Program-made: the position numbers and the translations under genes
Origin: Schmidtea polychroa
Taxonomy: Eukaryota
Reading direction: 5' to 3'
NCBI GenBank assembly: GCA_044892525.1
Contig: CM097888.1
Coordinates: forward strand, 34,224,001-34,288,000
DNA: 64,000 bases
Part shown: positions 1-39,591 of the stretch, one piece after another
Numbering within the stretch: the first letter of the stretch is position 1
How the letters are laid out: the number at the start of each line of letters is the position of its first letter
Notes under the pieces: generated by a model
Told to the model about the DNA's origin: nothing
Database searches by the model: none
Seen by the model: the letters and a program-made list of their open reading frames with translations, nothing else

Positions 1-681
1 CTCCCAACTTACACTCTCATTTTCGATTAACAGTCTTTCTGATTCTTCATCCGGTTTCTGTATAGGAACTATTTCTTCGACAATTTCAACAGTTTCACAT
101 TCAACTGTGCAGCAACTCAATTCAAACATCGACGACTCATCTATCACTTTCACTCCTACTGTCATTACACCGACTTCTACAGTTTCTATCATTTGATCTA
201 CTTGACTGTCTTCCATACTTATTGTATATTCACTTGAACATTCTACAATCACACTTCTGAATTCTGATCCGACCTCGACTGCCTTAGAACCAACATGACT
301 CAAGCTTTCTTCTATTGATTTACATTCAAAACTGCTTTCACTATCAACTGTCTCACACATGAACTCAGTCATTGTTTCTTGGAATTTTCCTACAGCTTCA
401 TGACTTGTTAGTGTATCAATGAATACAATATGCTTTTCTCCGAATGTTTCGCTTCCTACTTCAATCAATTTACTCTCTACACTACTACCGAAGTCAACTG
501 TGTCTTTTAGTTTTTCGAAAGAAACCTCTACAATTTCATTATCTTTCACTGATTCACTACTCATATCTATAGCCTCTGCTTTATAGTCAGTTAACTTATT
601 TGAAGCCTTTGTATCTTTTTCCAAGCTCGTATGTGTCAATTCGATTATTCCAGTTTCAGTTGCAATGTTTTCAGATTTGAT
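1..681 (-). CDS. Type-A module exon, partial (cut by the window edge)
   Basis: Acceptor at 682, open frame to position 1, homologous to the other A exons. Confidence 0.8.
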   Translation of the reverse strand, partial: MKSENIATETGIIELTHTSLEKDTKASNKLTDYKAEAIDMSSESVKDNEIVEVSFEKLKDTVDFGSSVESKLIEVGSETFGEKHIVFIDTLTSHEAVGKFQETMTEFMCETVDSESSFECKSIEESLSHVGSKAVEVGSEFRSVIVECSSEYTISMEDSQVDQMIETVEVGVMTVGVKVIDESSMFELSCCTVECETVEIVEEIVPIQKPDEESERLLIENESVSWE

Positions 682-3600: not shown

Positions 3601-6600
3601 TCACATTCAACTGTGCAGCAACTCAAATCAAACATCGACGACTCATCTATCACTTTCACTCCTACTGTCATTACACCGACTTCTACAGTTTCTATCATTT
3701 GATCTACTTGACTGTCTTCCATACTTATTGTATATTCACTTGAACATTCTACAATCACACTTCTGAATTCTGATCCGACCTCGACTGCCTTAGAACAAAC
3801 ATGACTCAAGCTTTCTTCTATTGATTTACATTCAAAACTGCTTTCACTATCAACTGTCTCACACATGAACTCAGTCATTGTTTCTTGGAATTTTCCTACA
3901 GCTTCATGACTTGTTAGTGTATCAATGAATACAATATGCTTTTCTCCGAATGTTTCGCTTCCTACTTCAATCAATTTACTCTCTACACTACTACCGAAGT
4001 CAACTGTGTCTTTTAGTTTTTCGAAAGAAACATCTACAATTTCATTATCTTTCACTGATTCACTACTCATATCTATAGCCTCTGCTTTATAGTCAGTTAA
4101 CTTATTTGAAGCCTTTGTATCTTTTTCCAAGCTCGTATGTGTCAATTCGATTATTCCAGTTTCAGTTGCAATATTTTCAGATTTGATCTAAACACGAGAA
4201 AACATTTCTTAAAAATGTTCACAATGTTTTGTAGATTAGTTTAAACGATAATTTATCATTATAAAAAGTGGTTAAAAGAAATGAATAAAAAATATGTTTA
4301 ATGAAAAACATTATCTTCCTTATAGAGATAATGATAATATTTCAACAATGATTTAGTAATATAATTTGTATAAAAAAGTTGATTTTGACAAATATATTTC
4401 AATTAAATGATATTTATTATGTCGATAAATCATTATTTTATTTTTCAAATATAATTACAACTTAAATATTATGTTAACGTTAAATGAATAAATTCTTTAT
4501 AGAAAATTATATGATTAATTTAGCTTCTAATTTTAGAATTATAGTTATAGCATAGTATTTTTTAATTTATATCTTTATTTTTAATTAATCTTTTATCTCC
4601 ATCTTACCTTTCAAATTTTATAAATATAAGAAATTCTTGTAATTTTCAAAGCTGGTTTTAAATTTCAGCTTTTTCGACTAAATTTCAACTAAATTCGATA
4701 TATATATTTTGAGGATAGAATAATATATAATAAATTTATATAAATAAAGTCTTATTGTATTATTATTAGTTTCAGTATTATTTAAACACAGCGTTATTTG
4801 TAATTAACCTCATTTCAATTGTATAATATTTTTTGAAAATATTTAACTAATAGTTCATAATTTAATATCTCAGATCGTATTTCTTATCCAGATATGCTTT
4901 TAATTTCTTAATTTTGTTCTCATTGTAATTTATTGTAATATTTTTGAAAAATTTTTTACTTTAGTCATATTTTAAAAAGATGTATTTAATAATTTTTTTG
5001 ATGACTTCGAAACACAAATAAATTTGTTTTATATGAGGTATATATAGTCGATACTATACTCAATAGTACTTATTGCAAACTCTATTGCAATTGTATCTTA
5101 AGTTTTTGTATTGAATGACTTCTTATTTGAAACCCTTTTAAACGATTGATGAACTGAAAAAATTTGAAATGTGTTTAAAGTTATTATTATATATTTAATA
5201 TTATTTTATTAAACCTATTATCTTACCGAATGTTTTGAATGAGTTTAAGGTAAGACAATTTTATATTGTAGAACAATTTGATTAAGCGAAAAGAATCTAC
5301 TCACATAAAATTCAGAAATTTGAAATTTTAATTTTTATAAAAATAATAAATCTATAAAAAGTCCATCTTTAGAAAATTCTTTTTTTTAATTATGAGTGGT
5401 CAAAGAATTTTATCAGAATATTATAAAAACATGTCTATGTATAGAAGGTAGAGTGAAATTATTTAGAAGAAAATTTATAAACCTGTCCGAATTCGGTTTC
5501 GTAACTGCTTTCACAATAATCAATTTCTTTATTTAAATTCATATTTATAAGTGACATTTTGCAGTTGTAACAATACTTTTCATTTCAGTTTCACTAGCTA
5601 TACTCTCATTTTCTATCAATATTACATCAGCCTTTTCTTTTTCACTAGCCTTTTCAATTATTTCTTCTTCTATCATTTCTGTTCTTTCACATTCAAAAGA
5701 TTTCCAAACCACTTCACAACTTGTTGATTCATCGACAACTTCAACGAATAAAGTCTCCGTGCCGATTTCGAAATATTCTTTTGTTTCATTAACTTTACTT
5801 TCAATCAATTTTATTCTATATTCGCTAGAACAATCTACGGTTTTACTTCTGCTTTCAATTTCCGCTTCTGAAACTTGTTCTTCCTCAAATTTCCCATCTA
5901 AGAAATTCCAACAGTCTACCATTTCAATCTTAAAATCCGTTAACGTGTTGACAACCTTTGATTTCACTTCGTAGCTCGTTAAAACATTCACTAACACCTC
6001 ATGCTTTTCTCCATAAATTTCGGTTCCAACTTCTATTAGTTGACTCTTGACGTATTTACTGAAATCCACACTCTCTTTCTCGACTCCAAATTCTATTTCA
6101 ACTATTTCAGTGTCTTTAGAGAATTCACTCTTCATCTCAATGATGTCTGTTCGGAAATCTGTGGATTTATCTCTATTTCTTATCTCAAGTTCCAAACTTG
6201 TATCAATCAACTCTGGTAGATTCGACTCCACCGCAATGTTTTCAGTTTTAATCTGAATTTAATGAAACCATTTACATTCAATAAAATTGTTGCTATTAAT
6301 ATTATTTTCAGTATGATTATATTTTAATATAAAGATCAAAATAACTATATTATAGCTCGCCGTAAATTAAAACATTATTAAAATACATTACTTATTACCA
6401 TTCAAAGAAACAATTTCATTTTCATTTTTCAATAATCGTTATTTAAATATTTTTAGATTTTAAAATTAAAATTATATTTCATTTGGCTGATTAAATTTAT
6501 AAGTAATATATGTTATTATTTTTACTATTATCAATTTGATTTCTTAATAAAATGTTGTCAAGTTTGTTTACCTATTAAATAATTTCTATTAAAAATATAT

Positions 6601-9600
6601 TTCATTATTATTTTTTTTATTAATAAATGAATATTAATAATATTATTTTATATATTTAGTTAAGAAAATTCATCAACCATACATAAAGTTCCCATTTCAA
6701 TTTACACTCTATTTGAGTAAATTAAAACAAATAATTTTTAAAGCAGTGAAGAATTAAGATTTCATTTGAAATTGATCTCTAATAAAAATATGAAAATTAT
6801 TTACCTCTAAATGTTGGGATGAATCTTTCACCAATGATTTGAACTCGAATCCTATTTCAGATGTTATATCACATATTTTACTTTCGAATTGGATGTCAAT
6901 CGAACAAGATTTTATTTCAGATGTCGCTACCATTGTCTTGAGTTTTCTCTGTTCAGTTTCAAATAATTTATTTTCATAAGCCTGTCCGAATTCGGTTTCG
7001 TAACTGCTTTCACAATAATCTATTTCTTTATTTGAAATCATGTCAATCAGTGAACATTTTGCAGTTGTAACAATACTTTTCATTTCAGTTTCACTAGCTA
7101 TACTCTCATTTTCTATCAATATTACATCAGCCTTTTCTTTTTCACTAGCCTTTTCAATTATTTCTTCTTCTATCATTTCTGTTCTTTCACATTCAAAAGA
7201 TTTCCAAACCACTTCACAACTTGTTGATTCATCGACAACTTCAACGAATAAAGTCTCCGTGCCGATTTCGAAATATTCTTTTGTTTCATTAACTTTACTT
7301 TCAATCAATTTTATTCTATATTCGCTAGAACAATCTACGGTTTTACTTCTGCTTTCAATTTCCGCTTCTGAAACTTGTTCTTCCTCAAATTTCCCATCTA
7401 AGAAATTCCAACAGTCTACCATTTCAATCTTAAAATCCGTTAACGTGTTGACAACCTTTGATTTCACTTCGTAGCTCGTTAAAACATTCACTAACACCTC
7501 ATGCTTTTCTCCATAAATTTCGGTTCCAACTTCTATTAGTTGACTCTTGACGTATTTACTGAAATCCACACTCTCTTTCTCGACTCCAAATTCTATTTCA
7601 ACTATTTCAGTGTCTTTAGAGAATTCACTCTTCATCTCAATGATGTCTGTTCGGAAATCTGTGGATTTATCTCTATTTCTTATCTCAAGTTCCAAACTTG
7701 TATCAATCAACTCTGGTAGATTCGACTCCACCGCAATGTTTTCAGTTTTAATCTGAATTTAATGAAACCATTTACATTCAATAAAATTGTTGCTATTAAT
7801 ATTATTTTCAGTATGATTATATTTTAATATAAAGATCAAAATAATTATATTATAGCTCGCCGTAAATTAAAACATTATTAAAATACATTACTTATTACCA
7901 TTCAAAGAAACAATTTCATTTTCATTTTTCAATAATCGTTATTTAAATATTTTTAGATTTTAAAATTAAAATTATATTTCATTTGGCTGATTAAATTTAT
8001 AAGTAATATATGTTATTATTTTTACTATTATCAATTTGATTTCTTAATAAAATGTTGTCAAGTTTGTTTACCTATTAAATAATTTCTATTAAAAATATAT
8101 TTCATTATTATTTTTTTTATTAATAAATGAATATTAATAATATTATTTTATATATTTAGTTAAGAAAATTCATCAACCATACATAAAGTTCCCATTTCAA
8201 TTTACACTCTATTTGAGTAAATTAAAACAAATAATTTTTAAAGCAGTGAAGAATTAAGATTTCATTTGAAATTGATCTCTAATAAAAATATGAAAATTAT
8301 TTACCTCTAAATGTTGGGATGAATCTTTCACCAATGATTTGAACTCGAATCCTATTTCAGATGTTATATCACATATTTTACTTTCGAATTGGATGTCAAT
8401 CGAACAAGATTTTATTTCAGATGTCGCTACCATTGTCTTGAGTTTTCTCTGTTCAGTTTCAAATAATTTATTTTCATAAGCCTGTCCGAATTCGGTTTCG
8501 TAACTGCTTTCACAATAATCTATTTCTTTATTTGAAATCATGTCAATCAGTGAACATTTTGCAGTTGTAACAATACTTTTCATTTCAGTTTCACTAGCTA
8601 TACTCTCATTTTCTATCAATATTACATCAGCCTTTTCTTTTTCACTAGCCTTTTCAATTATTTCTTCTTCTATCATTTCTGTTCTTTCACATTCAAAAGA
8701 TTTCCAAACCACTTCACAACTTGTTGATTCATCGACAACTTCAACGAATAAAGTCTCCGTGCCGATTTCGAAATATTCTTTTGTTTCATTAACTTTACTT
8801 TCAATCAATTTTATTCTATATTCGCTAGAACAATCTACGGTTTTACTTCTGCTTTCAATTTCCGCTTCTGAAACTTGTTCTTCCTCAAATTTCCCATCTA
8901 AGAAATTCCAACAGTCTACCATTTCAATCTTAAAATCCGTTAACGTGTTGACAACCTTTGATTTCACTTCGTAGCTCGTTAAAACATTCACTAACACCTC
9001 ATGCTTTTCTCCATAAATTTCGGTTCCAACTTCTATTAGTTGACTCTTGACGTATTTACTGAAATCCACACTCTCTTTCTCGACTCCAAATTCTATTTCA
9101 ACTATTTCAGTGTCTTTAGAGAATTCACTCTTCATCTCAATGATGTCTGTTCGGAAATCTGTGGATTTATCTCTATTTCTTATCTCAAGTTCCAAACTTG
9201 TATCAATCAACTCTGGTAGATTCGACTCCACCGCAATGTTTTCAGTTTTAATCTGAATTTAATGAAACCATTTACATTCAATAAAATTGTTGCTATTAAT
9301 ATTATTTTCAGTATGATTATATTTTAATATAAAGATCAAAATAATTATATTATAGCTCGCCGTAAATTAAAACATTATTAAAATACATTACTTATTACCA
9401 TTCAAAGAAACAATTTCATTTTCATTTTTCAATAATCGTTATTTAAATATTTTTAGATTTTAAAATTAAAATTATATTTCATTTGGCTGATTAAATTTAT
9501 AAGTAATATATGTTATTATTTTTACTATTATCAATTTGATTTCTTAATAAAATGTTGTCAAGTTTGTTTACCTATTAAATAATTTCTATTAAAAATATAT

Positions 9601-12600
9601 TTCATTATTATTTTTTTTATTAATAAATGAATATTAATAATATTATTTTATATATTTAGTTAAGAAAATTCATCAACCATACATAAAGTTCCCATTTCAA
9701 TTTACACTCTATTTGAGTAAATTAAAACAAATAATTTTTAAAGCAGTGAAGAATTAAGATTTCATTTGAAATTGATCTCTAATAAAAATATGAAAATTAT
9801 TTACCTCTAAATGTTGGGATGAATCTTTCACCAATGATTTGAACTCGAATCCTATTTCAGATGTTATATCACATATTTTACTTTCGAATTGGATGTCAAT
9901 CGAACAAGATTTTATTTCAGATGTCGCTACCATTGTCTTGAGTTTTCTCTGTTCAGTTTCAAATAATTTATTTTCATAAGCCTGTCCGAATTCGGTTTCG
10001 TAACTGCTTTCACAATAATCTATTTCTTTATTTGAAATCATGTCAATCAGTGAACATTTTGCAGTTGTAACAATACTTTTCATTTCAGTTTCACTAGCTA
10101 TACTCTCATTTTCTATCAATATTACATCAGCCTTTTCTTTTTCACTAGCCTTTTCAATTATTTCTTCTTCTATCATTTCTGTTCTTTCACATTCAAAAGA
10201 TTTCCAAACCACTTCACAACTTGTTGATTCATCGACAACTTCAACGAATAAAGTCTCCGTGCCGATTTCGAAATATTCTTTTGTTTCATTAACTTTACTT
10301 TCAATCAATTTTATTCTATATTCGCTAGAACAATCTACGGTTTTACTTCTGCTTTCAATTTCCGCTTCTGAAACTTGTTCTTCCTCAAATTTCCCATCTA
10401 AGAAATTCCAACAGTCTACCATTTCAATCTTAAAATCCGTTAACGTGTTGACAACCTTTGATTTCACTTCGTAGCTCGTTAAAACATTCACTAACACCTC
10501 ATGCTTTTCTCCATAAATTTCGGTTCCAACTTCTATTAGTTGACTCTTGACGTATTTACTGAAATCCACACTCTCTTTCTCGACTCCAAATTCTATTTCA
10601 ACTATTTCAGTGTCTTTAGAGAATTCACTCTTCATCTCAATGATGTCTGTTCGGAAATCTGTGGATTTATCTCTATTTCTTATCTCAAGTTCCAAACTTG
10701 TATCAATCAACTCTGGTAGATTCGACTCCACCGCAATGTTTTCAGTTTTAATCTGAATTTAATGAAACCATTTACATTCAATAAAATTGTTGCTATTAAT
10801 ATTATTTTCAGTATGATTATATTTTAATATAAAGATCAAAATAATTATATTATAGCTCGCCGTAAATTAAAACATTATTAAAATACATTACTTATTACCA
10901 TTCAAAGAAACAATTTCATTTTCATTTTTCAATAATCGTTATTTAAATATTTTTAGATTTTAAAATTAAAATTATATTTCATTTGGCTGATTAAATTTAT
11001 AAGTAATATATGTTATTATTTTTACTATTATCAATTTGATTTCTTAATAAAATGTTGTCAAGTTTGTTTACCTATTAAATAATTTCTATTAAAAATATAT
11101 TTCATTATTATTTTTTTTATTAATAAATGAATATTAATAATATTATTTTATATATTTAGTTAAGAAAATTCATCAACCATACATAAAGTTCCCATTTCAA
11201 TTTACACTCTATTTGAGTAAATTAAAACAAATAATTTTTAAAGCAGTGAAGAATTAAGATTTCATTTGAAATTGATCTCTAATAAAAATATGAAAATTAT
11301 TTACCTCTAAATGTTGGGATGAATCTTTCACCAATGATTTGAACTCGAATCCTATTTCAGATGTTATATCACATATTTTACTTTCGAATTGGATGTCAAT
11401 CGAACAAGATTTTATTTCAGATGTCGCTACCATTGTCTTGAGTTTTCTCTGTTCAGTTTCAAATAATTTATTTTCATAAGCCTGTCCGAATTCGGTTTCG
11501 TAACTGCTTTCACAATAATCTATTTCTTTATTTGAAATCATGTCAATCAGTGAACATTTTGCAGTTGTAACAATACTTTTCATTTCAGTTTCACTAGCTA
11601 TACTCTCATTTTCTATCAATATTACATCAGCCTTTTCTTTTTCACTAGCCTTTTCAATTATTTCTTCTTCTATCATTTCTGTTCTTTCACATTCAAAAGA
11701 TTTCCAAACCACTTCACAACTTGTTGATTCATCGACAACTTCAACGAATAAAGTCTCCGTGCCGATTTCGAAATATTCTTTTGTTTCATTAACTTTACTT
11801 TCAATCAATTTTATTCTATATTCGCTAGAACAATCTACGGTTTTACTTCTGCTTTCAATTTCCGCTTCTGAAACTTGTTCTTCCTCAAATTTCCCATCTA
11901 AGAAATTCCAACAGTCTACCATTTCAATCTTAAAATCCGTTAACGTGTTGACAACCTTTGATTTCACTTCGTAGCTCGTTAAAACATTCACTAACACCTC
12001 ATGCTTTTCTCCATAAATTTCGGTTCCAACTTCTATTAGTTGACTCTTGACGTATTTACTGAAATCCACACTCTCTTTCTCGACTCCAAATTCTATTTCA
12101 ACTATTTCAGTGTCTTTAGAGAATTCACTCTTCATCTCAATGATGTCTGTTCGGAAATCTGTGGATTTATCTCTATTTCTTATCTCAAGTTCCAAACTTG
12201 TATCAATCAACTCTGGTAGATTCGACTCCACCGCAATGTTTTCAGTTTTAATCTGAATTTAATGAAACCATTTACATTCAATAAAATTGTTGCTATTAAT
12301 ATTATTTTCAGTATGATTATATTTTAATATAAAGATCAAAATAACTATATTATAGCTCGCCGTAAATTAAAACATTATTAAAATACATTACTTATTACCA
12401 TTCAAAGAAACAATTTCATTTTCATTTTTCAATAATCGTTATTTAAATATTTTTAGATTTTAAAATTAAAATTATATTTCATTTGGCTGATTAAATTTAT
12501 AAGTAATATATGTTATTATTTTTACTATTATCAATTTGATTTCTTAATAAAATGTTGTCAAGTTTGTTTACCTATTAAATAATTTCTATTAAAAATATAT

Positions 12601-15600
12601 TTCATTATTATTTTTTTTATTAATAAATGAATATTAATAATATTATTTTATATATTTAGTTAAGAAAATTCATCAACCATACATAAAGTTCCCATTTCAA
12701 TTTACACTCTATTTGAGTAAATTAAAACAAATAATTTTTAAAGCAGTGAAGAATTAAGATTTCATTTGAAATTGATCTCTAATAAAAATATGAAAATTAT
12801 TTACCTCTAAATGTTGGGATGAATCTTTCACCAATGATTTGAACTCGAATCCTATTTCAGATGTTATATCACATATTTTACTTTCGAATTGGATGTCAAT
12901 CGAACAAGATTTTATTTCAGATGTCGCTACCATTGTCTTGAGTTTTCTCTGTTCAGTTTCAAATAATTTATTTTCATAAGCCTGTCCGAATTCAGTTTCG
13001 TAACTGCTTTCACAATAATCTATTTCTTTATTTGAAATCATGTCAATCAGTGAACATTTTGCAGTTGTAACAATACTTTTCATTTCAGTTTCACTAGCTA
13101 TACTCTCATTTTCTATCAATATTACATCAGCCTTTTCTTTTTCACTAGCCTTTTCAATTATTTCTTCTTCTATCATTTCTGTTCTTTCACATTCAAAAGA
13201 TTTCCAAACCACTTCACAACTTGTTGATTCATCGACAACTTCAACGAATAAAGTCTCCGTGCCGATTTCGAAATATTCTTTTGTTTCATTAACTTTACTT
13301 TCAATCAATTTTATTCTATATTCGCTAGAACAATCTACGGTTTTACTTCTGCTTTCAATTTCCGCTTCTGAAACTTGTTCTTCCTCAAATTTCCCATCTA
13401 AGAAATTCCAACAGTCTACCATTTCAATCTTAAAATCCGTTAACGTGTTGACAACCTTTGATTTCACTTCGTAGCTCGTTAAAACATTCACTAACACCTC
13501 ATGCTTTTCTCCATAAATTTCGGTTCCAACTTCTATTAGTTGACTCTTGACGTATTTACTGAAATCCACACTCTCTTTCTCGACTCCAAATTCTATTTCA
13601 ACTATTTCAGTGTCTTTAGAGAATTCACTCTTCATCTCAATGATGTCTGTTCGGAAATCTGTGGATTTATCTCTATTTCTTATCTCAAGTTCCAAACTTG
13701 TATCAATCAACTCTGGTAGATTCGACTCCACCGCAATGTTTTCAGTTTTAATCTGAATTTAATGAAACCATTTACATTCAATAAAATTGTTGCTATTAAT
13801 ATTATTTTCAGTATGATTATATTTTAATATAAAGATCAAAATAACTATATTATAGCTCGCCGTAAATTAAAACATTATTAAAATACATTACTTATTACCA
13901 TTCAAAGAAACAATTTCATTTTCATTTTTCAATAATCGTTATTTAAATATTTTTAGATTTTAAAATTAAAATTATATTTCATTTGGCTGATTAAATTTAT
14001 AAGTAATATATGTTATTATTTTTACTATTATCAATTTGATTTCTTAATAAAATGTTGTCAAGTTTGTTTACCTATTAAATAATTTCTATTAAAAATATAT
14101 TTCATTATTATTTTTTTTATTAATAAATGAATATTAATAATATTATTTTATATATTTAGTTAAGAAAATTCATCAACCATACATAAAGTTCCCATTTCAA
14201 TTTACACTCTATTTGAGTAAATTAAAACAAATAATTTTTAAAGCAGTGAAGAATTAAGATTTCATTTGAAATTGATCTCTAATAAAAATATGAAAATTAT
14301 TTACCTCTAAATGTTGGGATGAATCTTTCACCAATGATTTGAACTCGAATCCTATTTCAGATGTTATATCACATATTTTACTTTCGAATTGGATGTCAAT
14401 CGAACAAGATTTTATTTCAGATGTCGCTACCATTGTCTTGAGTTTTCTCTGTTCAGTTTCAAATAATTTATTTTCATAAGCCTGTCCGAATTCGGTTTCG
14501 TAACTGCTTTCACAATAATCTATTTCTTTATTTGAAATCATGTCAATCAGTGAACATTTTGCAGTTGTAACAATACTTTTCATTTCAGTTTCACTAGCTA
14601 TACTCTCATTTTCTATCAATATTACATCAGCCTTTTCTTTTTCACTAGCCTTTTCAATTATTTCTTCTTCTATCATTTCTGTTCTTTCACATTCAAAAGA
14701 TTTCCAAACCACTTCACAACTTGTTGATTCATCGACAACTTCAACGAATAAAGTCTCCGTGCCGATTTCGAAATATTCTTTTGTTTCATTAACTTTACTT
14801 TCAATCAATTTTATTCTATATTCGCTAGAACAATCTACGGTTTTACTTCTGCTTTCAATTTCCGCTTCTGAAACTTGTTCTTCCTCAAATTTCCCATCTA
14901 AGAAATTCCAACAGTCTACCATTTCAATCTTAAAATCCGTTAACGTGTTGACAACCTTTGATTTCACTTCGTAGCTCGTTAAAACATTCACTAACACCTC
15001 ATGCTTTTCTCCATAAATTTCGGTTCCAACTTCTATTAGTTGACTCTTGACGTATTTACTGAAATCCACACTCTCTTTCTCGACTCCAAATTCTATTTCA
15101 ACTATTTCAGTGTCTTTAGAGAATTCACTCTTCATCTCAATGATGTCTGTTCGGAAATCTGTGGATTTATCTCTATTTCTTATCTCAAGTTCCAAACTTG
15201 TATCAATCAACTCTGGTAGATTCGACTCCACCGCAATGTTTTCAGTTTTAATCTGAATTTAATGAAACCATTTACATTCAATAAAATTGTTGCTATTAAT
15301 ATTATTTTCAGTATGATTATATTTTAATATAAAGATCAAAATAACTATATTATAGCTCGCCGTAAATTAAAACATTATTAAAATACATTACTTATTACCA
15401 TTCAAAGAAACAATTTCATTTTCATTTTTCAATAATCGTTATTTAAATATTTTTAGATTTTAAAATTAAAATTATATTTCATTTGGCTGATTAAATTTAT
15501 AAGTAATATATGTTATTATTTTTACTATTATCAATTTGATTTCTTAATAAAATGTTGTCAAGTTTGTTTACCTATTAAATAATTTCTATTAAAAATATAT

Positions 15601-18600
15601 TTCATTATTATTTTTTTTATTAATAAATGAATATTAATAATATTATTTTATATATTTAGTTAAGAAAATTCATCAACCATACATAAAGTTCCCATTTCAA
15701 TTTACACTCTATTTGAGTAAATTAAAACAAATAATTTTTAAAGCAGTGAAGAATTAAGATTTCATTTGAAATTGACCTCTAATAAAAATATGAAAATTAT
15801 TTACCTCTAAATGTTGGGATGAATCTTTCACCAATGATTTGAACTCGAATCCTATTTCAGATGTTATATCACATATTTTACTTTCGAATTGGGTGTCAAT
15901 CGAACAAGATTTTATTTCAGATGTCGCTACCATTGTCTTGAGTTTTCTCTGTTCAGTTTCAAATAATTTATTTTCATAAGCCTGTCCGAATTCGGTTTCG
16001 TAACTGCTTTCACAATAATCTATTTCTTTATTTGAAATCATGTCAATCAGTGAACATTTTGCAGTTGTAACAATACTTTTCATTTCAGTTTCACTAGCTA
16101 TACTCTCATTTTCTATCAATATTACATCAGCCTTTTCTTTTTCACTAGCCTTTTCAATTATTTCTTCTTCTATCATTTCTGTTCTTTCACATTCAAAAGA
16201 TTTCCAAACCACTTCACAACTTGTTGATTCATCGACAACTTCAACGAATAAAGTCTCCGTGCCGATTTCGAAATATTCTTTTGTTTCATTAACTTTACTT
16301 TCAATCAATTTTATTCTATATTCGCTAGAACAATCTACGGTTTTACTTCTGCTTTCAATTTCCGCTTCTGAAACTTGTTCTTCCTCAAATTTCCCATCTA
16401 AGAAATTCCAACAGTCTACCATTTCAATCTTAAAATCCGTTAACGTGTTGACAACCTTTGATTTCACTTCGTAGCTCGTTAAAACATTCACTAACACCTC
16501 ATGCTTTTCTCCATAAATTTCGGTTCCAACTTCTATTAGTTGACTCTTGACGTATTTACTGAAATCCACACTCTCTTTCTCGACTCCAAATTCTATTTCA
16601 ACTATTTCAGTGTCTTTAGAGAATTCACTCTTCATCTCAATGATGTCTGTTCGGAAATCTGTGGATTTATCTCTATTTCTTATCTCAAGTTCCAAACTTG
16701 TATCAATCAACTCTGGTAGATTCGACTCCACCGCAATGTTTTCAGTTTTAATCTGAATTTAATGAAACCATTTACATTCAATAAAATTGTTGCTATTAAT
16801 ATTATTTTCAGTATGATTATATTTTAATATAAAGATCAAAATAATTATATTATAGCTCGCCGTAAATTAAAACATTATTAAAATACATTACTTATTACCA
16901 TTCAAAGAAACAATTTCATTTTCATTTTTCAATAATCGTTATTTAAATATTTTTAGATTTTAAAATTAAAATTATATTTCATTTGGCTGATTAAATTTAT
17001 AAGTAATATATGTTATTATTTTTACTATTATCAATTTGATTTCTTAATAAAATGTTGTCAAGTTTGTTTACCTATTAAATAATTTCTATTAAAAATATAT
17101 TTCATTATTATTTTTTTTATTAATAAATGAATATTAATAATATTATTTTATATATTTAGTTAAGAAAATTCATCAACCATACATAAAGTTCCCATTTCAA
17201 TTTACACTCTATTTGAGTAAATTAAAACAAATAATTTTTAAAGCAGTGAAGAATTAAGATTTCATTTGAAATTGACCTCTAATAAAAATATGAAAATTAT
17301 TTACCTCTAAATGTTGGGATGAATCTTTCACCAATGATTTGAACTCGAATCCTATTTCAGATGTTATATCACATATTTTACTTTCGAATTGGATGTCAAT
17401 CGAACAAGATTTTATTTCAGATGTCGCTACCATTGTCTTGAGTTTTCTCTGTTCAGTTTCAAATAATTTATTTTCATAAGCCTGTCCGAATTCGGTTTCG
17501 TAACTGCTTTCACAATAATCTATTTCTTTATTTGAAATCATGTCAATCAGTGAACATTTTGCAGTTGTAACAATACTTTTCATTTCAGTTTCACTAGCTA
17601 TACTCTCATTTTCTATCAATATTACATCAGCCTTTTCTTTTTCACTAGCCTTTTCAATTATTTCTTCTTCTATCATTTCTGTTCTTTCACATTCAAAAGA
17701 TTTCCAAACCACTTCACAACTTGTTGATTCATCGACAACTTCAACGAATAAAGTCTCCGTGCCGATTTCGAAATATTCTTTTGTTTCATTAACTTTACTT
17801 TCAATCAATTTTATTCTATATTCGCTAGAACAATCTACGGTTTTACTTCTGCTTTCAATTTCCGCTTCTGAAACTTGTTCTTCCTCAAATTTCCCATCTA
17901 AGAAATTCCAACAGTCTACCATTTCAATCTTAAAATCCGTTAACGTGTTGACAACCTTTGATTTCACTTCGTAGCTCGTTAAAACATTCACTAACACCTC
18001 ATGCTTTTCTCCATAAATTTTGGTTCCAACTTCTATTAGTTGACTCTTGACGTATTTACTGAAATCCACACTCTCTTTCTCGACTCCAAATTCTATTTCA
18101 ACTATTTCAGTGTCTTTAGAGAATTCACTCTTCATCTCAATGATGTCTGTTCGGAAATCTGTGGATTTATCTCTATTTCTTATCTCAAGTTCCAAACTTG
18201 TATCAATCAACTCTGGTAGATTCGACTCCACCGCAATGTTTTCAGTTTTAATCTGAATTTAATGAAACCATTTACATTCAATAAAATTGTTGCTATTAAT
18301 ATTATTTTCAGTATGATTATATTTTAATATAAAGATCAAAATAACTATATTATAGCTCGCCGTAAATTAAAACATTATTAAAATACATTACTTATTACCA
18401 TTCAAAGAAACAATTTCATTTTCATTTTTCAATAATCGTTATTTAAATATTTTTAGATTTTAAAATTAAAATTATATTTCATTTGGCTGATTAAATTTAT
18501 AAGTAATATATGTTATTATTTTTACTATTATCAATTTGATTTCTTAATAAAATGTTGTCAAGTTTGTTTACCTATTAAATAATTTCTATTAAAAATATAT

Positions 18601-21600
18601 TTCATTATTATTTTTTTTATTAATAAATGAATATTAATAATATTATTTTATATATTTAGTTAAGAAAATTCATCAACCATACATAAAGTTCCCATTTCAA
18701 TTTACACTCTATTTGAGTAAATTAAAACAAATAATTTTTAAAGCAGTGAAGAATTAAGATTTCATTTGAAATTGACCTCTAATAAAAATATGAAAATTAT
18801 TTACCTCTAAATGTTGGGATGAATCTTTCACCAATGATTTGAACTCGAATCCTATTTCAGATGTTATATCACATATTTTACTTTCGAATTGGATGTCAAT
18901 CGAACAAGATTTTATTTCAGATGTCGCTACCATTGTCTTGAGTTTTCTCTGTTCAGTTTCAAATAATTTATTTTCATAAGCCTGTCCGAATTCGGTTTCG
19001 TAACTGCTTTCACAATAATCTATTTCTTTATTTGAAATCATGTCAATCAGTGAACATTTTGCAGTTGTAACAATACTTTTCATTTCAGTTTCACTAGCTA
19101 TACTCTCATTTTCTATCAATATTACATCAGCCTTTTCTTTTTCACTAGCCTTTTCAATTATTTCTTCTTCTATCATTTCTGTTCTTTCACATTCAAAAGA
19201 TTTCCAAACCACTTCACAACTTGTTGATTCATCGACAACTTCAACGAATAAAGTCTCCGTGCCGATTTCGAAATATTCTTTTGTTTCATTAACTTTACTT
19301 TCAATCAATTTTATTCTATATTCGCTAGAACAATCTACGGTTTTACTTCTGCTTTCAATTTCCGCTTCTGAAACTTGTTCTTCCTCAAATTTCCCATCTA
19401 AGAAATTCCAACAGTCTACCATTTCAATCTTAAAATCCGTTAACGTGTTGACAACCTTTGATTTCACTTCGTAGCTCGTTAAAACATTCACTAACACCTC
19501 ATGCTTTTCTCCATAAATTTCGGTTCCAACTTCTATTAGTTGACTCTTGACGTATTTACTGAAATCCACACTCTCTTTCTCGACTCCAAATTCTATTTCA
19601 ACTATTTCAGTGTCTTTAGAGAATTCACTCTTCATCTCAATGATGTCTGTTCGGAAATCTGTGGATTTATCTCTATTTCTTATCTCAAGTTCCAAACTTG
19701 TATCAATCAACTCTGGTAGATTCGACTCCACCGCAATGTTTTCAGTTTTAATCTGAATTTAATGAAACCATTTACATTCAATAAAATTGTTGCTATTAAT
19801 ATTATTTTCAGTATGATTATATTTTAATATAAAGATCAAAATAATTATATTATAGCTCGCCGTAAATTAAAACATTATTAAAATACATTACTTATTACCA
19901 TTCAAAGAAACAATTTCATTTTCATTTTTCAATAATCGTTATTTAAATATTTTTAGATTTTAAAATTAAAATTATATTTCATTTGGCTGATTAAATTTAT
20001 AAGTAATATATGTTATTATTTTTACTATTATCAATTTGATTTCTTAATAAAATGTTGTCAAGTTTGTTTACCTATTAAATAATTTCTATTAAAAATATAT
20101 TTCATTATTATTTTTTTTATTAATAAATGAATATTAATAATATTATTTTATATATTTAGTTAAGAAAATTCATCAACCATACATAAAGTTCCCATTTCAA
20201 TTTACACTCTATTTGAGTAAATTAAAACAAATAATTTTTAAAGCAGTGAAGAATTAAGATTTCATTTGAAATTGACCTCTAATAAAAATATGAAAATTAT
20301 TTACCTCTAAATGTTGGGATGAATCTTTCACCAATGATTTGAACTCGAATCCTATTTCAGATGTTATATCACATATTTTACTTTCGAATTGGATGTCAAT
20401 CGAACAAGATTTTATTTCAGATGTCGCTACCATTGTCTTGAGTTTTCTCTGTTCAGTTTCAAATAATTTATTTTCATAAGCCTGTCCGAATTCGGTTTCG
20501 TAACTGCTTTCACAATAATCTATTTCTTTATTTGAAATCATGTCAATCAGTGAACATTTTGCAGTTGTAACAATACTTTTCATTTCAGTTTCACTAGCTA
20601 TACTCTCATTTTCTATCAATATTACATCAGCCTTTTCTTTTTCACTAGCCTTTTCAATTATTTCTTCTTCTATCATTTCTGTTCTTTCACATTCAAAAGA
20701 TTTCCAAACCACTTCACAACTTGTTGATTCATCGACAACTTCAACGAATAAAGTCTCCGTGCCGATTTGGAAATATTCTTTTGTTTCATTAACTTTACTT
20801 TCAATCAATTTTATTCTATATTCGCTAGAACAATCTACGGTTTTACTTCTGCTTTCAATTTCCGCTTCTGAAACTTGTTCTTCCTCAAATTTCCCATCTA
20901 AGAAATTCCAACAGTCTACCATTTCAATCTTAAAATCCGATAACGTGTTGACAACCTTTGATTTCACTTCGTAGCTCGTTAAAACATTCACTAACACCTC
21001 ATGCTTTTCTCCATAAATTTTGGTTCCAACTTCTATTAGTTGACTCTTGACGTATTTACTGAAATCCACACTCTCTTTCTCGACTCCAAATTCTATTTCA
21101 ACTATTTCAGTGTCTTTAGAGAATTCACTCTTCATCTCAATGATGTCTGTTCGGAAATCTGTGGATTTATCTCTATTTCTTATCTCAAGTTCCAAACTTG
21201 TATCAATCAACTCTGGTAGATTCGACTCCACCGCAATGTTTTCAGTTTTAATCTGAATTTAATGAAACCATTTACATTCAATAAAATTGTTGCTATTAAT
21301 ATTATTTTCAGTATGATTATATTTTAATATAAAGATCAAAATAACTATATTATAGCTCGCCGTAAATTAAAACATTATTAAAATACATTACTTATTACCA
21401 TTCAAAGAAACAATTTCATTTTCATTTTTCAATAATCGTTATTTAAATATTTTTAGATTTTAAAATTAAAATTATATTTCATTTGGCTGATTAAATTTAT
21501 AAGTAATATATGTTATTATTTTTACTATTATCAATTTGATTTCTTAATAAAATGTTGTCAAGTTTGTTTACCTATTAAATAATTTCTATTAAAAATATAT

Positions 21601-24600
21601 TTCATTATTATTTTTTTTATTAATAAATGAATATTAATAATATTATTTTATATATTTAGTTAAGAAAATTCATCAACCATACATAAAGTTCCCATTTCAA
21701 TTTACACTCTATTTGAGTAAATTAAAACAAATAATTTTTAAAGCAGTGAAGAATTAAGATTTCATTTGAAATTGACCTCTAATAAAAATATGAAAATTAT
21801 TTACCTCTAAATGTTGGGATGAATCTTTCACCAATGATTTGAACTCGAATCCTATTTCAGATGTTATATCACATATTTTACTTTCGAATTGGGTGTCAAT
21901 CGAACAAGATTTTATTTCAGATGTCGCTACCATTGTCTTGAGTTTTCTCTGTTCAGTTTCAAATAATTTATTTTCATAAGCCTGTCCGAATTCGGTTTCG
22001 TAACTGCTTTCACAATAATCTATTTCTTTATTTGAAATCATGTCAATCAGTGAACATTTTGCAGTTGTAACAATACTTTTCATTTCAGTTTCACTAGCTA
22101 TACTCTCATTTTCTATCAATATTACATCAGCCTTTTCTTTTTCACTAGCCTTTTCAATTATTTCTTCTTCTATCATTTCTGTTCTTTCACATTCAAAAGA
22201 TTTCCAAACCACTTCACAACTTGTTGATTCATCGACAACTTCAACGAATAAAGTCTCCGTGCCGATTTCGAAATATTCTTTTGTTTCATTAACTTTACTT
22301 TCAATCAATTTTATTCTATATTCGCTAGAACAATCTACGGTTTTACTTCTGCTTTCAATTTCCGCTTCTGAAACTTGTTCTTCCTCAAATTTCCCATCTA
22401 AGAAATTCCAACAGTCTACCATTTCAATCTTAAAATCCGTTAACGTGTTGACAACCTTTGATTTCACTTCGTAGCTCGTTAAAACATTCACTAACACCTC
22501 ATGCTTTTCTCCATAAATTTCGGTTCCAACTTCTATTAGTTGACTCTTGACGTATTTACTGAAATCCACACTCTCTTTCTCGACTCCAAATTCTATTTCA
22601 ACTATTTCAGTGTCTTTAGAGAATTCACTCTTCATCTCAATGATGTCTGTTCGGAAATCTGTGGATTTATCTCTATTTCTTATCTCAAGTTCCAAACTTG
22701 TATCAATCAACTCTGGTAGATTCGACTCAACCGCAATGTTTTCAGTTTTAATCTGAATTTAATGAAACCATTTACATTCAATAAAATTGTTGCTATTAAT
22801 ATTATTTTCAGTATGATTATATTTTAATATAAAGATCAAAATAATTATATTATAGCTCGCCGTAAATTAAAACATTATTAAAATACATTACTTATTACCA
22901 TTCAAAGAAACAATTTCATTTTCATTTTTCAATAATCGTTATTTAAATATTTTTAGATTTTAAAATTAAAATTATATTTCATTTGGCTGATTAAATTTAT
23001 AAGTAATATATGTTATTATTTTTACTATTATCAATTTGATTTCTTAATAAAATGTTGTCAAGTTTGTTTACCTATTAAATAATTTCTATTAAAAATATAT
23101 TTCATTATTATTTTTTTTATTAATAAATGAATATTAATAATATTATTTTATATATTTAGTTAAGAAAATTCATCAACCATACATAAAGTTCCCATTTCAA
23201 TTTACACTCTATTTGAGTAAATTAAAACAAATAATTTTTAAAGCAGTGAAGAATTAAGATTTCATTTGAAATTGACCTCTAATAAAAATATGAAAATTAT
23301 TTACCTCTAAATGTTGGGATGAATCTTTCACCAATGATTTGAACTCGAATCCTATTTCAGATGTTATATCACATATTTTACTTTCGAATTGGGTGTCAAT
23401 CGAACAAGATTTTATTTCAGATGTCGCTACCATTGTCTTGAGTTTTCTCTGTTCAGTTTCAAATAATTTATTTTCATAAGCCTGTCCGAATTCGGTTTCG
23501 TAACTGCTTTCACAATAATCTATTTCTTTATTTGAAATCATGTCAATCAGTGAACATTTTGCAGTTGTAACAATACTTTTCATTTCAGTTTCACTAGCTA
23601 TACTCTCATTTTCTATCAATATTACATCAGCCTTTTCTTTTTCACTAGCCTTTTCAATTATTTCTTCTTCTATCATTTCTGTTCTTTCACATTCAAAAGA
23701 TTTCCAAACCACTTCACAACTTGTTGATTCATCGACAACTTCAACGAATAAAGTCTCCGTGCCGATTTCGAAATATTCTTTTGTTTCATTAACTTTACTT
23801 TCAATCAATTTTATTCTATATTCGCTAGAACAATCTACGGTTTTACTTCTGCTTTCAATTTCCGCTTCTGAAACTTGTTCTTCCTCAAATTTCCCATCTA
23901 AGAAATTCCAACAGTCTACCATTTCAATCTTAAAATCCGTTAACGTGTTGACAACCTTTGATTTCACTTCGTAGCTCGTTAAAACATTCACTAACACCTC
24001 ATGCTTTTCTCCATAAATTTCGGTTCCAACTTCTATTAGTTGACTCTTGACGTATTTACTGAAATCCACACTCTCTTTCTCGACTCCAAATTCTATTTCA
24101 ACTATTTCAGTGTCTTTAGAGAATTCACTCTTCATCTCAATGATGTCTGTTCGGAAATCTGTGGATTTATCTCTATTTCTTATCTCAAGTTCCAAACTTG
24201 TATCAATCAACTCTGGTAGATTCGACTCCACCGCAATGTTTTCAGTTTTAATCTGAATTTAATGAAACCATTTACATTCAATAAAATTGTTGCTATTAAT
24301 ATTATTTTCAGTATGATTATATTTTAATATAAAGATCAAAATAATTATATTATAGCTCGCCGTAAATTAAAACATTATTAAAATACATTACTTATTACCA
24401 TTCAAAGAAACAATTTCATTTTCATTTTTCAATAATCGTTATTTAAATATTTTTAGATTTTAAAATTAAAATTATATTTCATTTGGCTGATTAAATTTAT
24501 AAGTAATATATGTTATTATTTTTACTATTATCAATTTGATTTCTTAATAAAATGTTGTCAAGTTTGTTTACCTATTAAATAATTTCTATTAAAAATATAT

Positions 24601-27600
24601 TTCATTATTATTTTTTTTATTAATAAATGAATATTAATAATATTATTTTATATATTTAGTTAAGAAAATTCATCAACCATACATAAAGTTCCCATTTCAA
24701 TTTACACTCTATTTGAGTAAATTAAAACAAATAATTTTTAAAGCAGTGAAGAATTAAGATTTCATTTGAAATTGATCTCTAATAAAAATATGAAAATTAT
24801 TTACCTCTAAATGTTGGGATGAATCTTTCACCAATGATTTGAACTCGAATCCTATTTCAGATGTTATATCACATATTTTACTTTCGAATTGGATGTCAAT
24901 CGAACAAGATTTTATTTCAGATGTCGCTACCATTGTCTTGAGTTTTCTCTGTTCAGTTCCAAATAATTTATTTTCATAAGCCTGTCCGAATTCGGTTTCG
25001 TAACTGCTTTCACAATAATCTATTTCTTTATTTGAAATCATGTCAATCAGTGAACATTTTGCAGTTGTAACAATACTTTTCATTTCAGTTTCACTAGCTA
25101 TACTCTCATTTTCTATCAATATTACATCAGCCTTTTCTTTTTCACTAGCCTTTTCAATTATTTCTTCTTCTATCATTTCTGTTCTTTCACATTCAAAAGA
25201 TTTCCAAACCACTTCACAACTTGTTGATTCATCGACAACTTCAACGAATAAAGTCTCCGTGCCGATTTCGAAATATTCTTTTGTTTCATTAACTTTACTT
25301 TCAATCAATTTTATTCTATATTCGCTAGAACAATCTACGGTTTTACTTCTGCTTTCAATTTCCGCTTCTGAAACTTGTTCTTCCTCAAATTTCCCATCTA
25401 AGAAATTCCAACAGTCTACCATTTCAATCTTAAAATCCGTTAACGTGTTGACAACCTTTGATTTCACTTCGTAGCTCGTTAAAACATTCACTAACACCTC
25501 ATGCTTTTCTCCATAAATTTCGGTTCCAACTTCTATTAGTTGACTCTTGACGTATTTACTGAAATCCACACTCTCTTTCTCGACTCCAAATTCTATTTCA
25601 ACTATTTCAGTGTCTTTAGAGAATTCACTCTTCATCTCAATGATGTCTGTTCGGAAATCTGTGGATTTATCTCTATTTCTTATCTCAAGTTCCAAACTTG
25701 TATCAATCAACTCTGGTAGATTCGACTCCACCGCAATGTTTTCAGTTTTAATCTGAATTTAATGAAACCATTTACATTCAATAAAATTGTTGCTATTAAT
25801 ATTATTTTCAGTATGATTATATTTTAATATAAAGATCAAAATAATTATATTATAGCTCGCCGTAAATTAAAACATTATTAAAATACATTACTTATTACCA
25901 TTCAAAGAAACAATTTCATTTTCATTTTTCAATAATCGTTATTTAAATATTTTTAGATTTTAAAATTAAAATTATATTTCATTTGGCTGATTAAATTTAT
26001 AAGTAATATATGTTATTATTTTTACTATTATCAATTTGATTTCTTAATAAAATGTTGTCAAGTTTGTTTACCTATTAAATAATTTCTATTAAAAATATAT
26101 TTCATTATTATTTTTTTTATTAATAAATGAATATTAATAATATTATTTTATATATTTAGTTAAGAAAATTCATCAACCATACATAAAGTTCCCATTTCAA
26201 TTTACACTCTATTTGAGTAAATTAAAACAAATAATTTTTAAAGCAGTGAAGAATTAAGATTTCATTTGAAATTGACCTCTAATAAAAATATGAAAATTAT
26301 TTACCTCTAAATGTTGGGATGAATCTTTCACCAATGATTTGAACTCGAATCCTATTTCAGATGTTATATCACATATTTTACTTTCGAATTGGATGTCAAT
26401 CGAACAAGATTTTATTTCAGATGTCGCTACCATTGTCTTGAGTTTTCTCTGTTCAGTTTCAAATAATTTATTTTCATAAGCCTGTCCGAATTCGGTTTCG
26501 TAACTGCTTTCACAATAATCTATTTCTTTATTTGAAATCATGTCAATCAGTGAACATTTTGCAGTTGTAACAATACTTTTCATTTCAGTTTCACTAGCTA
26601 TACTCTCATTTTCTATCAATATTACATCAGCCTTTTCTTTTTCACTAGCCTTTTCAATTATTTCTTCTTCTATCATTTCTGTTCTTTCACATTCAAAAGA
26701 TTTCCAAACCACTTCACAACTTGTTGATTCATCGACAACTTCAACGAATAAAGTCTCCGTGCCGATTTCGAAATATTCTTTTGTTTCATTAACTTTACTT
26801 TCAATCAATTTTATTCTATATTCGCTAGAACAATCTACGGTTTTACTTCTGCTTTCAATTTCCGCTTCTGAAACTTGTTCTTCCTCAAATTTCCCATCTA
26901 AGAAATTCCAACAGTCTACCATTTCAATCTTAAAATCCGTTAACGTGTTGACAACCTTTGATTTCACTTCGTAGCTCGTTAAAACATTCACTAACACCTC
27001 ATGCTTTTCTCCATAAATTTCGGTTCCAACTTCTATTAGTTGACTCTTGACGTATTTACTGAAATCCACACTCTCTTTCTCGACTCCAAATTCTATTTCA
27101 ACTATTTCAGTGTCTTTAGAGAATTCACTCTTCATCTCAATGATGTCTGTTCGGAAATCTGTGGATTTATCTCTATTTCTTATCTCAAGTTCCAAACTTG
27201 TATCAATCAACTCTGGTAGATTCGACTCCACCGCAATGTTTTCAGTTTTAATCTGAATTTAATGAAACCATTTACATTCAATAAAATTGTTGCTATTAAT
27301 ATTATTTTCAGTATGATTATATTTTAATATAAAGATCAAAATAATTATATTATAGCTCGCCGTAAATTAAAACATTATTAAAATACATTACTTATTACCA
27401 TTCAAAGAAACAATTTCATTTTCATTTTTCAATAATCGTTATTTAAATATTTTTAGATTTTAAAATTAAAATTATATTTCATTTGGCTGATTAAATTTAT
27501 AAGTAATATATGTTATTATTTTTACTATTATCAATTTGATTTCTTAATAAAATGTTGTCAAGTTTGTTTACCTATTAAATAATTTCTATTAAAAATATAT

Positions 27601-39435: not shown

Positions 39436-39591
39436 TTTTTGCTGGGGCACTACTCGGTTGACCACTCACAATTCCACTTTCTAGTCTAGGAGATGAACGT
39501 CCATTACGATTATTTTGGTCACCACCGTGCCAACCCTGAGCCGAGCCCTGCATAACCTTCCCTCCAACATGATACCCGTGAGACACTTCAC

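What the first reader, a model, noticed from the sequence alone, without database searches (positions are those of the whole stretch)
6805..27252. 22-kb array of 14 near-identical symmetric exons inside a plakin gene: a candidate length-tunable giant protein
Seen: an exact 1500-bp period, each unit a 948-nt phase 0-0 exon plus a 552-bp intron, with no indel or stop noticed in any complete copy. Introns are as homogeneous as exons. Established: exon-intron tandem arrays such as LPA KIV-2 and the titin/nebulin triplicated regions vary in copy number, and titin length is tuned by splicing. Canonical plakins continue into a coiled-coil rod or spectrin repeats rather than such modules. Inference: any number of modules can be included without frameshift, so copy number or splicing could set the length of an acidic spacer in 316-aa steps.
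Basis: partly seen in the sequence, partly recalled or inferred. Interest (0 to 1): 0.85.

Follow-up and report, generated by a model that had tools for sequence, protein, structure and literature searches.

The report
Tandem identical-exon array in giant gene
A 22-kb run of fourteen almost identical exon-plus-intron units, followed by a second, older run of related units, sits inside a very large, lineage-restricted animal (probably planarian) gene; it is a real and tidy case of a known way of lengthening proteins, but length tuning and the link to a plakin gene are not shown.

Summary
Window 5554-27702 (minus strand) is a gap-free 1500-bp tandem array of 14.77 units. It holds 14 complete 948-nt exons (27252 down to 6805), all open, with identical AG/GT borders and phase 0-0. 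Only 9 of 1500 columns vary.

- a 15th copy that is frameshifted and truncated;
- a second array (B: 972-nt exon plus 196-nt intron, at least 3.7 units, running off the window start) whose module is 39-41% identical to A;
- the family's exon-equals-module layout, which is kept in eight distant relatives.

Two database proteins from a close relative carry the predicted junctions: big exon to A, and B to B. They may be gene models rather than transcripts. Copies within a species are 98-99.9% alike, against about 88-90% between species, so the arrays evolve in concert.

The plakin label rests on one plakin-type SH3 exon 8.6 kb upstream. Its splicing to the array gene is unproven.

Length tuning by copy number is a reasonable inference. 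Tuning by splicing is speculation.

The module is acidic (pI 4.4) with conserved motifs, so it is not a featureless spacer. Its fold is unknown (pLDDT 30).

This scan also reported a giant plakin-repeat exon elsewhere in this genome. I class this as a new member of a known kind, of moderate interest.

The parts
5554..27702 (-). Array A: exact 1500-bp tandem repeat, 14.77 units. Each unit is a 948-nt exon plus a 552-nt intron.
   Evidence: Lag-1500 identity and exact limits; 9 variable columns in 14 units.
26305..27252 (-). First A exon (316 aa, phase 0-0). The other 13 lie at minus 1500 per copy.
   Evidence: Sequence and splice sites read directly; all 14 checked.
6805..7752 (-). Fourteenth and last intact A exon.
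5470..6252 (-). Fifteenth A copy: a pseudo-exon with an intact acceptor, a 1-nt deletion near exon position 700 and a stop at 5545. Homology is lost about 80 nt further on.
28597..30688 (-). Large exon (696 aa from the ATG at 30684). It holds 44-aa repeats and ends in the donor GAG|GTAATG in phase 0. An acceptor-like TTTTATAG lies 4 nt before the ATG.
   Evidence: TRF period 132 at 29539-29956; P0017 is collinear with it.
3216..4187 (-). B exon 1 (324 aa, phase 0-0, acceptor GTGTTTAG|, donor |GTAAATAA).
2047..3018 (-). B exon 2.
879..1850 (-). B exon 3.
1..681 (-). B exon 4, cut by the window start. It matches B exon 2 at 680 of 681 nt, which indicates a 2-unit higher-order repeat.
35819..36178 (-). 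Plakin-type SH3 exon (a helix followed by an SH3 with an inserted loop). Whether it belongs to the same gene is not shown.
   Evidence: Pfam SH3_10; relatives P0018-P0020 carry PF17902; AF2 model pLDDT 57, best Foldseek match 3r6n, the desmoplakin plakin domain, E 4e-4.
36205..36342 (-). Exon just upstream of the SH3 exon (…RRWQL…MKDAKEIIKITK), separated from it by a very short intron.
   Evidence: Coding-score scan; relative P0019 reads through the same short intron.
33061..33300 (-). Last candidate plakin-like exon before the big exon. Its frame ends in a stop at 33058 unless it is spliced.
   Evidence: Coding-score scan and donor/acceptor phases. No family match.

Best explanation
The locus is part of one very large, lineage-restricted protein-coding gene on the minus strand. 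A 696-aa exon is followed by two head-to-tail arrays, in each of which one exon encodes one acidic module of about 36 kDa. Array A has 14 intact exons, and array B has at least 3.7 and continues beyond the window.

Shown: every exon starts and ends between codons, so any number of units keeps the reading frame.

Shown: A and B are old paralogues, 39-41% identical in protein, with introns that cannot be aligned.

Inferred: each array is kept uniform, introns included, by repeated unequal crossing-over or gene conversion between units. The within-species against between-species identities support this. Array A is the product of a very recent expansion or homogenisation.

Inferred: the protein made from the window alone would have at least 6,300 residues and carry a large negative charge. 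The modules probably act as repeated, sequence-specific structural or binding units along a long intracellular filament or linker, rather than as a featureless spacer.

Inferred: copy number is expected to vary between individuals or lineages.

Not tested: whether cells also vary the length by skipping exons.
For: - Array geometry, intact frames and identical splice sites.
- Second array B.
- Coding constraint between A and B: the exon alignment scores 169 against 63-75 for shuffles, while the intron alignment scores 37 against 38-40. Identity by codon position is 0.60, 0.64 and 0.43.
- Family: only 9 hits among 1.84 billion representative proteins. Eight are true relatives, and the six full-length ones read into a GT exactly at the module end, so the exon-equals-module layout is old.
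- Predicted junctions seen in a close relative's proteins: P0017 has ...ENYE|IKTENIV (big exon to A). P0001 has ...CFSEIE|IKSENIA (B to B), then a 540-aa tail.
- Concerted evolution: window B copies are 98.8-99.0% identical in exon nt (316-319 of 324 aa), the two B copies in P0001 match at 139/140 aa, and window B against P0001 B matches at 286-291/324 aa.
- Real paralogous variation: 9 distinct A-unit haplotypes, with variants shared by non-adjacent units, for example units 4 and 6.
Against: - No transcript or read-level data could be consulted. P0001 and P0017 are database entries of unknown origin and may be gene models rather than cDNA.
- The A-to-B connection (6805 to 4187, over the pseudo-exon) rests only on same strand, adjacency, homology and matching phase.
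- The 15th copy keeps a perfect acceptor, and a GTGAGT lies at the homologous donor position. Transcripts might include it and end at the stop at 5545.
- Variants among A copies are 5 nonsynonymous to 2 synonymous, against a neutral expectation of 81% nonsynonymous. The young copies therefore give no sign of selection by themselves.
- AlphaFold2 finds no fold for the module (pLDDT 30), and no function is known for any family member.
Confidence: 0.75

Rival explanations
1. The array exists but its size in the assembly is wrong. The assembler or polisher expanded, collapsed or homogenised a repeat whose copies are too alike to place, so '14' and the perfect 1500-bp register are partly artefacts.
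For: - Copies differ at only 0.16% of sites, and there is not one indel even in the A/T homopolymer runs of the introns.
- At 22 kb the array is as long as or longer than many single reads (own knowledge).
- No read data are available here.
Against: - There are 9 distinct unit haplotypes, with variants shared between particular non-adjacent units. This gives a lower bound of several real copies and a pattern expected from block duplications.
- The neighbouring B array has the same architecture at 1-1.5% divergence, where misassembly is much less likely.
- The edge copy is degenerate, as expected at the edge of a real array.
Confidence: 0.15
2. The array gene and the plakin-like exons are two separate genes. 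The acidic-module gene starts at the ATG at 30684, possibly behind a spliced-leader trans-splice acceptor. The upstream SH3-bearing gene ends at the stop at 33058.
For: - P0017, from a close relative, begins at the same Met.
- An acceptor-like TTTTATAG lies 4 nt before that ATG. Spliced-leader trans-splicing is common in flatworms (PMC12582326 abstract).
- The coding score of the last plakin-like exon runs on to a phase-0 donor or a stop at 33061-33058, and that phase fits none of the acceptors near 30688.
- No spectrin, plakin-repeat or GAR domain was found in the big exon, in the modules or in the tail of P0001.
Against: - A plakin domain that stops just after its SH3-bearing repeat would be an odd gene.
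- The next coding sequence on the same strand, 2.4 kb downstream, is the big exon.
- A phase-compatible pair exists: donor GGA|GTAAAT at 33150/33149 with the acceptor at 30686.
- P0017 may be a truncated model.
- A 141-base N gap (35066-35206) and unscored small exons could hide connecting pieces.
Confidence: 0.45
3. Most of the A copies are young, selectively neutral passengers. The amplification is recent, and the extra exons are largely skipped, or they are tolerated without function or are mildly harmful, so no length is being 'tuned'.
For: - Variants among copies fit neutrality: 5 nonsynonymous to 2 synonymous against 81% expected.
- Introns are as uniform as exons.
- A is the most divergent module type in the family, at 28-43% identity to all others.
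Against: - There are too few variants to test selection.
- All 14 copies keep open frames and perfect splice sites, although at this age that carries little weight.
- An A-type module follows the big exon in the relative too, so type A itself is old and retained.
Confidence: 0.15

Closest known systems
LPA kringle IV type 2 array (human apolipoprotein(a))
   Same: Head-to-tail units that include exon and intron. The unit preserves the reading frame, introns are nearly as identical as exons, and protein length is set by unit number (own knowledge).
   Different: The LPA unit is about 5.5 kb with two exons, and it encodes a well-known folded, secreted domain. Here the unit is 1.5 kb with a single 948-nt exon, it encodes an orphan acidic module with no signal peptide seen, and two different arrays lie in the one gene. 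Copy-number polymorphism is documented for LPA and untested here.
Nebulin triplicate region and titin repeated-exon blocks
   Same: Blocks of near-identical exons lie inside giant cytoskeletal genes and are prone to copy-number change (nebulin: PMC9109913). Titin's spring length is set by exon inclusion (PMC6300359).
   Different: Those blocks contain several exons for known folds or for PEVK. The module here has 1 proline in 316 residues, so it is not PEVK-like. No alternative splicing is known for it.
Plakin / spectraplakin family
   Same: An exon with a plakin-type SH3 preceded by a helix lies upstream on the same strand. Like plakins, the gene is giant and repetitive. This scan reported a spectraplakin with a 47-kb plakin-repeat exon elsewhere in this genome (not checked here).
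   Different: No spectrin-repeat, plakin-repeat, GAR or calponin-homology match was found in the array gene. The modules are unrelated to plakin repeats. Continuity with the SH3 exon is unproven.

Membership tests
Intragenic exon-intron tandem array (LPA KIV-2 type) | Head-to-tail units, each containing whole exon(s) plus intron | tested here: met
   The 1500-bp unit is a 948-nt exon plus a 552-nt intron, present 14.77 times.
Intragenic exon-intron tandem array (LPA KIV-2 type) | The unit preserves the reading frame whatever the copy number | tested here: met
   All 14 exons are in phase 0-0, with identical AG/GT borders.
Intragenic exon-intron tandem array (LPA KIV-2 type) | Homogenisation of the copies, introns included (concerted evolution) | tested here: met
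   2 of 552 intron columns and 7 of 948 exon columns vary. Identity is 98-99.9% within a species against 88-90% between species.
Intragenic exon-intron tandem array (LPA KIV-2 type) | Copy number differs between individuals and sets protein size | not testable with these tools
   No reads, no population data and no protein data are available.
Plakin family | Plakin domain with an SH3 embedded in a spectrin repeat | tested here: met
   SH3_10 scores 27.8 bits against a cut-off of 22.8 on 35816-36307. PF17902 is present on three relatives. The best Foldseek match is the desmoplakin plakin domain, 3r6n, at E 4e-4, but on a low-confidence model of pLDDT 57.
Plakin family | A series of flanking spectrin repeats (SR3-SR9) | tested here: inconclusive
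   Neighbouring open segments score as coding but match no Pfam family. An N gap at 35066-35206 interrupts the region.
Plakin family | Downstream rod, spectrin-repeat rod, plakin-repeat or GAR domains | tested here: not met
   No such Pfam match was found in the big exon, in the A or B modules, or in the 540-aa tail of P0001.
Plakin family | SH3 exon and array exons lie on one transcript | not testable with these tools
   Only phase compatibility could be examined. P0017 starts at the big exon's ATG.
Titin PEVK-type differentially spliced spring | Pro/Glu/Val/Lys-rich disordered composition | tested here: not met
   The module has 1 Pro in 316 residues. It is Glu-, Ser- and Ile-rich with 8 Cys, and it has conserved motifs.
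Titin PEVK-type differentially spliced spring | Tissue-regulated inclusion of symmetric exons | not testable with these tools
   Exon symmetry is met, but no RNA data are available.

The most novel reading that the evidence does not exclude
The number of 36-kDa acidic modules is polymorphic between individuals or clonal lines of this animal. Because all A exons have identical splice sites, cells also make a ladder of isoforms by skipping exons. The length and charge of a plakin-anchored filament would then be a heritable and a regulated variable, in steps of 316 aa.
Probability: 0.12. Interest if true: 0.7.

Novelty: new member of a known kind. Interest (0 to 1): 0.42.

Why it matters
It is an unusually clean natural example of how a protein can grow by whole-exon units. 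One symmetric exon encodes one module, introns are homogenised together with exons, and two arrays of different ages lie side by side in one gene. That shows successive stages of the same process.

The module family has no known function or fold, and it appears in only a handful of related AT-rich animal sequences among 1.84 billion representative proteins. The gene is therefore a candidate lineage-specific giant structural protein.

For genome annotation it is a warning: such loci are broken into fragments in databases (P0001, P0017), and their copy number needs long-read checks.

Tried and rejected
- TRF cannot see periods above 500, so it missed both arrays. My own lag scans replaced it.
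- Pfam on the module, the big exon, the neighbouring plakin-like segments and the tail of P0001 gave no family at or above threshold, except SH3_10 on the SH3 exon.
- The ESM Atlas gave nothing above 0.67 for the A module or the tail of P0001, and only generic SH3 clusters at up to 0.80 for the SH3 exon.
- AlphaFold2 on a 12-sequence alignment of the module gave pLDDT 30, so no fold search was made with that model.
- A search for internal repeats within the module found nothing above shuffled controls.
- A PDB sequence search with the SH3 exon gave no plakin hit. The fold search did.
- A protein search with the first 140 residues of the big exon, meant to find spliced fragments showing what precedes the Met, found nothing.
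- The apparent homologue on a bacterial-looking contig (L001) is a chimeric scaffold, with GC jumping from 36% to 58% at about base 800. It is not gene transfer.
- P0009 (E 1.5e-4, eight short stretches on one motif) is treated as spurious.
- Rfam found nothing in the window.
- Four literature searches found no description of this gene.
- Reading the antisense 144-aa ORFs in each unit as genes was rejected. They are the usual mirror of a Glu-rich frame and recur only because the unit recurs.
Full report
**1. The observation**

A lag scan of the window against itself gives 99.4% identity at lag 1500 over 5481-27780, and nothing at 1498, 1499, 1501 or 1502. Mismatch positions fix the array at 5554-27702, which is 22,149 bp or 14.77 units.

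The coding strand is the minus strand. Each unit has a 948-nt open frame bounded by ...AAATTCAG|ATTAAAACT and CATTTAGAG|GTAAATAA. All 14 complete copies (27252 down to 6805) are stop-free, carry the same 20 nt before the acceptor and the same 8 nt after the donor, and are in phase 0-0.

Only 9 of 1500 columns vary among the 14 units, 7 in the exon and 2 in the intron. There are no indels. The mean pairwise difference is 0.16%, and there are 9 distinct unit haplotypes. Some variants are shared by particular non-adjacent units; units 4 and 6, for example, share two. That is what block duplications within a real array would give.

An open frame of 316 codons at this composition has a chance of about 2.5e-15. 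Exons have 33% GC and introns 16%.

**2.

- *A 15th copy.* It starts at 6252 with the same acceptor but has a 1-nt deletion near exon position 700 and a stop at 5545. Its similarity decays about 80 nt later. It is a degenerate edge copy. A GTGAGT sits at the homologous donor position, so its inclusion, which would end the frame, cannot be excluded.
- *A second array.* Downstream on the same strand lies array B with period 1168/1169, a 972-nt exon (324 aa) and a 196/197-nt intron. Its borders are GTGTTTAG| and |GTAAATAA and it is again in phase 0-0. Its exons are at 4187-3216, 3018-2047, 1850-879 and 681 to the window start. B copies are 98.8-99.0% identical in exon nt. The fourth matches the second at 680 of 681 nt, so there is a 2-unit higher-order repeat.
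- *The relation of A to B.* The two modules are 39-41% identical in protein.

**3. It is coding sequence under long-term constraint**

The A and B exons align far better than shuffled controls (score 169 against 63-75). Their introns do not (37 against 38-40). Identity by codon position is 0.60, 0.64 and 0.43, so the third position is the most diverged.

A profile of A and B, run against 1.84 billion representative proteins, found only 9 hits. One of these (P0009) is a weak match to a single motif and is set aside.

One hit, P0001, is a 1003-aa database protein. It holds one partial and one full B module, spliced ...CFSEIE|IKSENIA..., followed by a 540-aa tail.

The others are single exon-sized open frames on 1-2 kb AT-rich contigs (L002 has 28% GC). 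They are 28-54% identical to A or B. The full-length ones run into a Val codon, that is a GT, exactly at the module end. So one module per symmetric exon is an old feature of the family.

The alignment has 13 invariant and 24 nearly invariant columns. Type A is the most divergent member.

**4. Upstream exon and predicted junctions**

A 696-aa open frame (ATG at 30684) ends in the donor GAG|GTAATG at 28597 in phase 0. It holds 44-aa repeats (TRF period 132).

The only database relative of this exon, P0017 (836 aa), matches at 71% overall. The figure is lowered by an 88-residue gap, which corresponds to two extra 44-aa repeats in P0017. P0017 starts at the same Met and reads ...ENYE|IKTENIVLESNIPELID..., so it crosses the predicted junction between the big exon and an A module.

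P0001 and P0017 are therefore independent support for the splice sites. Their origin, gene model or cDNA, is unknown to me.

**5. Concerted evolution**

- Window B copies share 316-319 of 324 residues.
- The two B copies in P0001 share 139 of 140 residues.
- Window B against P0001 B shares only 286-291 of 324.
- The A-type start in P0017 matches window A at 35 of 52 residues.

Copies are thus much more alike within a genome than between genomes, while both module types predate the split. This is the signature of unequal crossing-over or gene conversion. It says nothing about regulated tuning.

**6. Nature of the module**

The A module has 316 aa, weighs 36.4 kDa, has pI 4.4 and a net charge of -38. 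It has 58 Glu, 1 Pro and 8 Cys, and no internal repeat above shuffled controls. On a charge-hydropathy estimate that I made from those numbers it sits on the border between folded and disordered.

AlphaFold2 with the 12-sequence alignment gave pLDDT 30, so the fold is unresolved. Pfam and the Atlas gave nothing usable. The conserved motifs argue for a specific structure or binding surface rather than a plain spacer.

The window alone encodes 6,319 residues: 696, plus 14 times 316, plus 3 times 324, plus 227.

**7. The plakin question**

The open segment at 35816-36307 matches Pfam SH3_10, the plakin-type SH3, at 27.8 bits against a cut-off of 22.8. Three exon-sized relatives from other contigs carry PF17902, and one of them reads through the same tiny upstream intron. 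A low-confidence model (pLDDT 57) has the desmoplakin plakin domain as its best PDB match (3r6n, E 4e-4) and plectin at rank 10. A plakin-type SH3 exon is therefore real.

Neighbouring segments score as coding but match no family.

The link to the array gene is open:
- P0017 starts at the big exon's Met.
- An acceptor-like TTTTATAG lies 4 nt before that Met. It could be a cis acceptor or a spliced-leader trans-splice acceptor.
- The natural phase-0 end of the last plakin-like exon does not fit the acceptors there, although another donor/acceptor pair would.
- A nucleobindin-like exon on the plus strand at 47918-48154, and transposon pieces, limit how far the upstream gene can extend.

I put one gene against two at about even odds.

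**8. Comparison and verdict**

The architecture works like the LPA KIV-2 array and the nebulin and titin repeated-exon blocks (own knowledge; PMC9109913 and PMC6300359 were seen). It meets the structural criteria of that kind. Polymorphism and expression are untested.

It is not PEVK-like in composition. It is not shown to be a plakin beyond the upstream SH3 exon.

Other agents of this scan judged the genome probably planarian and reported another giant repeat gene in it, a spectraplakin with a 47-kb plakin-repeat exon. I did not check either claim.

I found no paper describing this gene.

Verdict: a real, well-formed and recently homogenised exon-intron array in an orphan giant gene. It is a new member of a known kind, of moderate interest. 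The length-tuning reading remains a hypothesis.

Noticed in passing
window 1-4187 (-): A second exon-intron array (B): a 972-nt exon plus a 196/197-nt intron, at least 3.7 units, with neighbouring exons 98.8-99.0% alike. It has a 2-unit higher-order repeat (lag 2337) and runs off the window start.
   Followed up: yes
window 5470-6252 (-): A 15th A copy with an intact acceptor but a 1-nt deletion, a stop at 5545 and then lost homology. A GTGAGT lies at the homologous donor position, so inclusion would truncate the protein before the B modules.
   Followed up: partly
window 29539-29956 (-): Tandem 132-nt (44-aa) repeats inside the big exon. The close relative's protein P0017 has two more of them, so this part also changes in repeat number.
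   Followed up: partly
window 30685-30695 (-): An acceptor-like TTTTATAG lies 4 nt before the ATG of the big exon. It could be a cis acceptor or a spliced-leader trans-splice site.
   Followed up: no
L001:1-4966: A metagenome scaffold in which a module fragment at 36% GC is joined at about base 800 to bacterial cell-envelope genes at 55-60% GC. It is an assembly chimera, not gene transfer.
   Followed up: yes
window 38945-39607 and 43673-44494 (-); 62427-62966 (-): The pieces of a pogo/Tc5-type transposase (HTH_Tnp_Tc5, DDE_1) lie about 4 kb apart, as if interrupted by another insertion. A further DDE_1 piece lies near the window end.
   Followed up: partly
window 47918-48154 (+) and 49366-49791 (+): A nucleobindin-like exon (NUCB1_N, E 8e-13) lies on the opposite strand, with a hAT dimerisation-domain fragment near it.
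   Followed up: no
window 35066-35206: An assembly gap (141 N) lies inside the plakin-like exon region, between the SH3 exon and the next candidate exon. It was left as it is.
   Followed up: no
P0009, P0015, P0016 (ENA contigs of 0.66-1.6 Mb): Proteins built of about 58-aa tandem repeats that share only a VDVLTSH-like motif with the module (E 1.5e-4). Probably a chance or very remote match.
   Followed up: no
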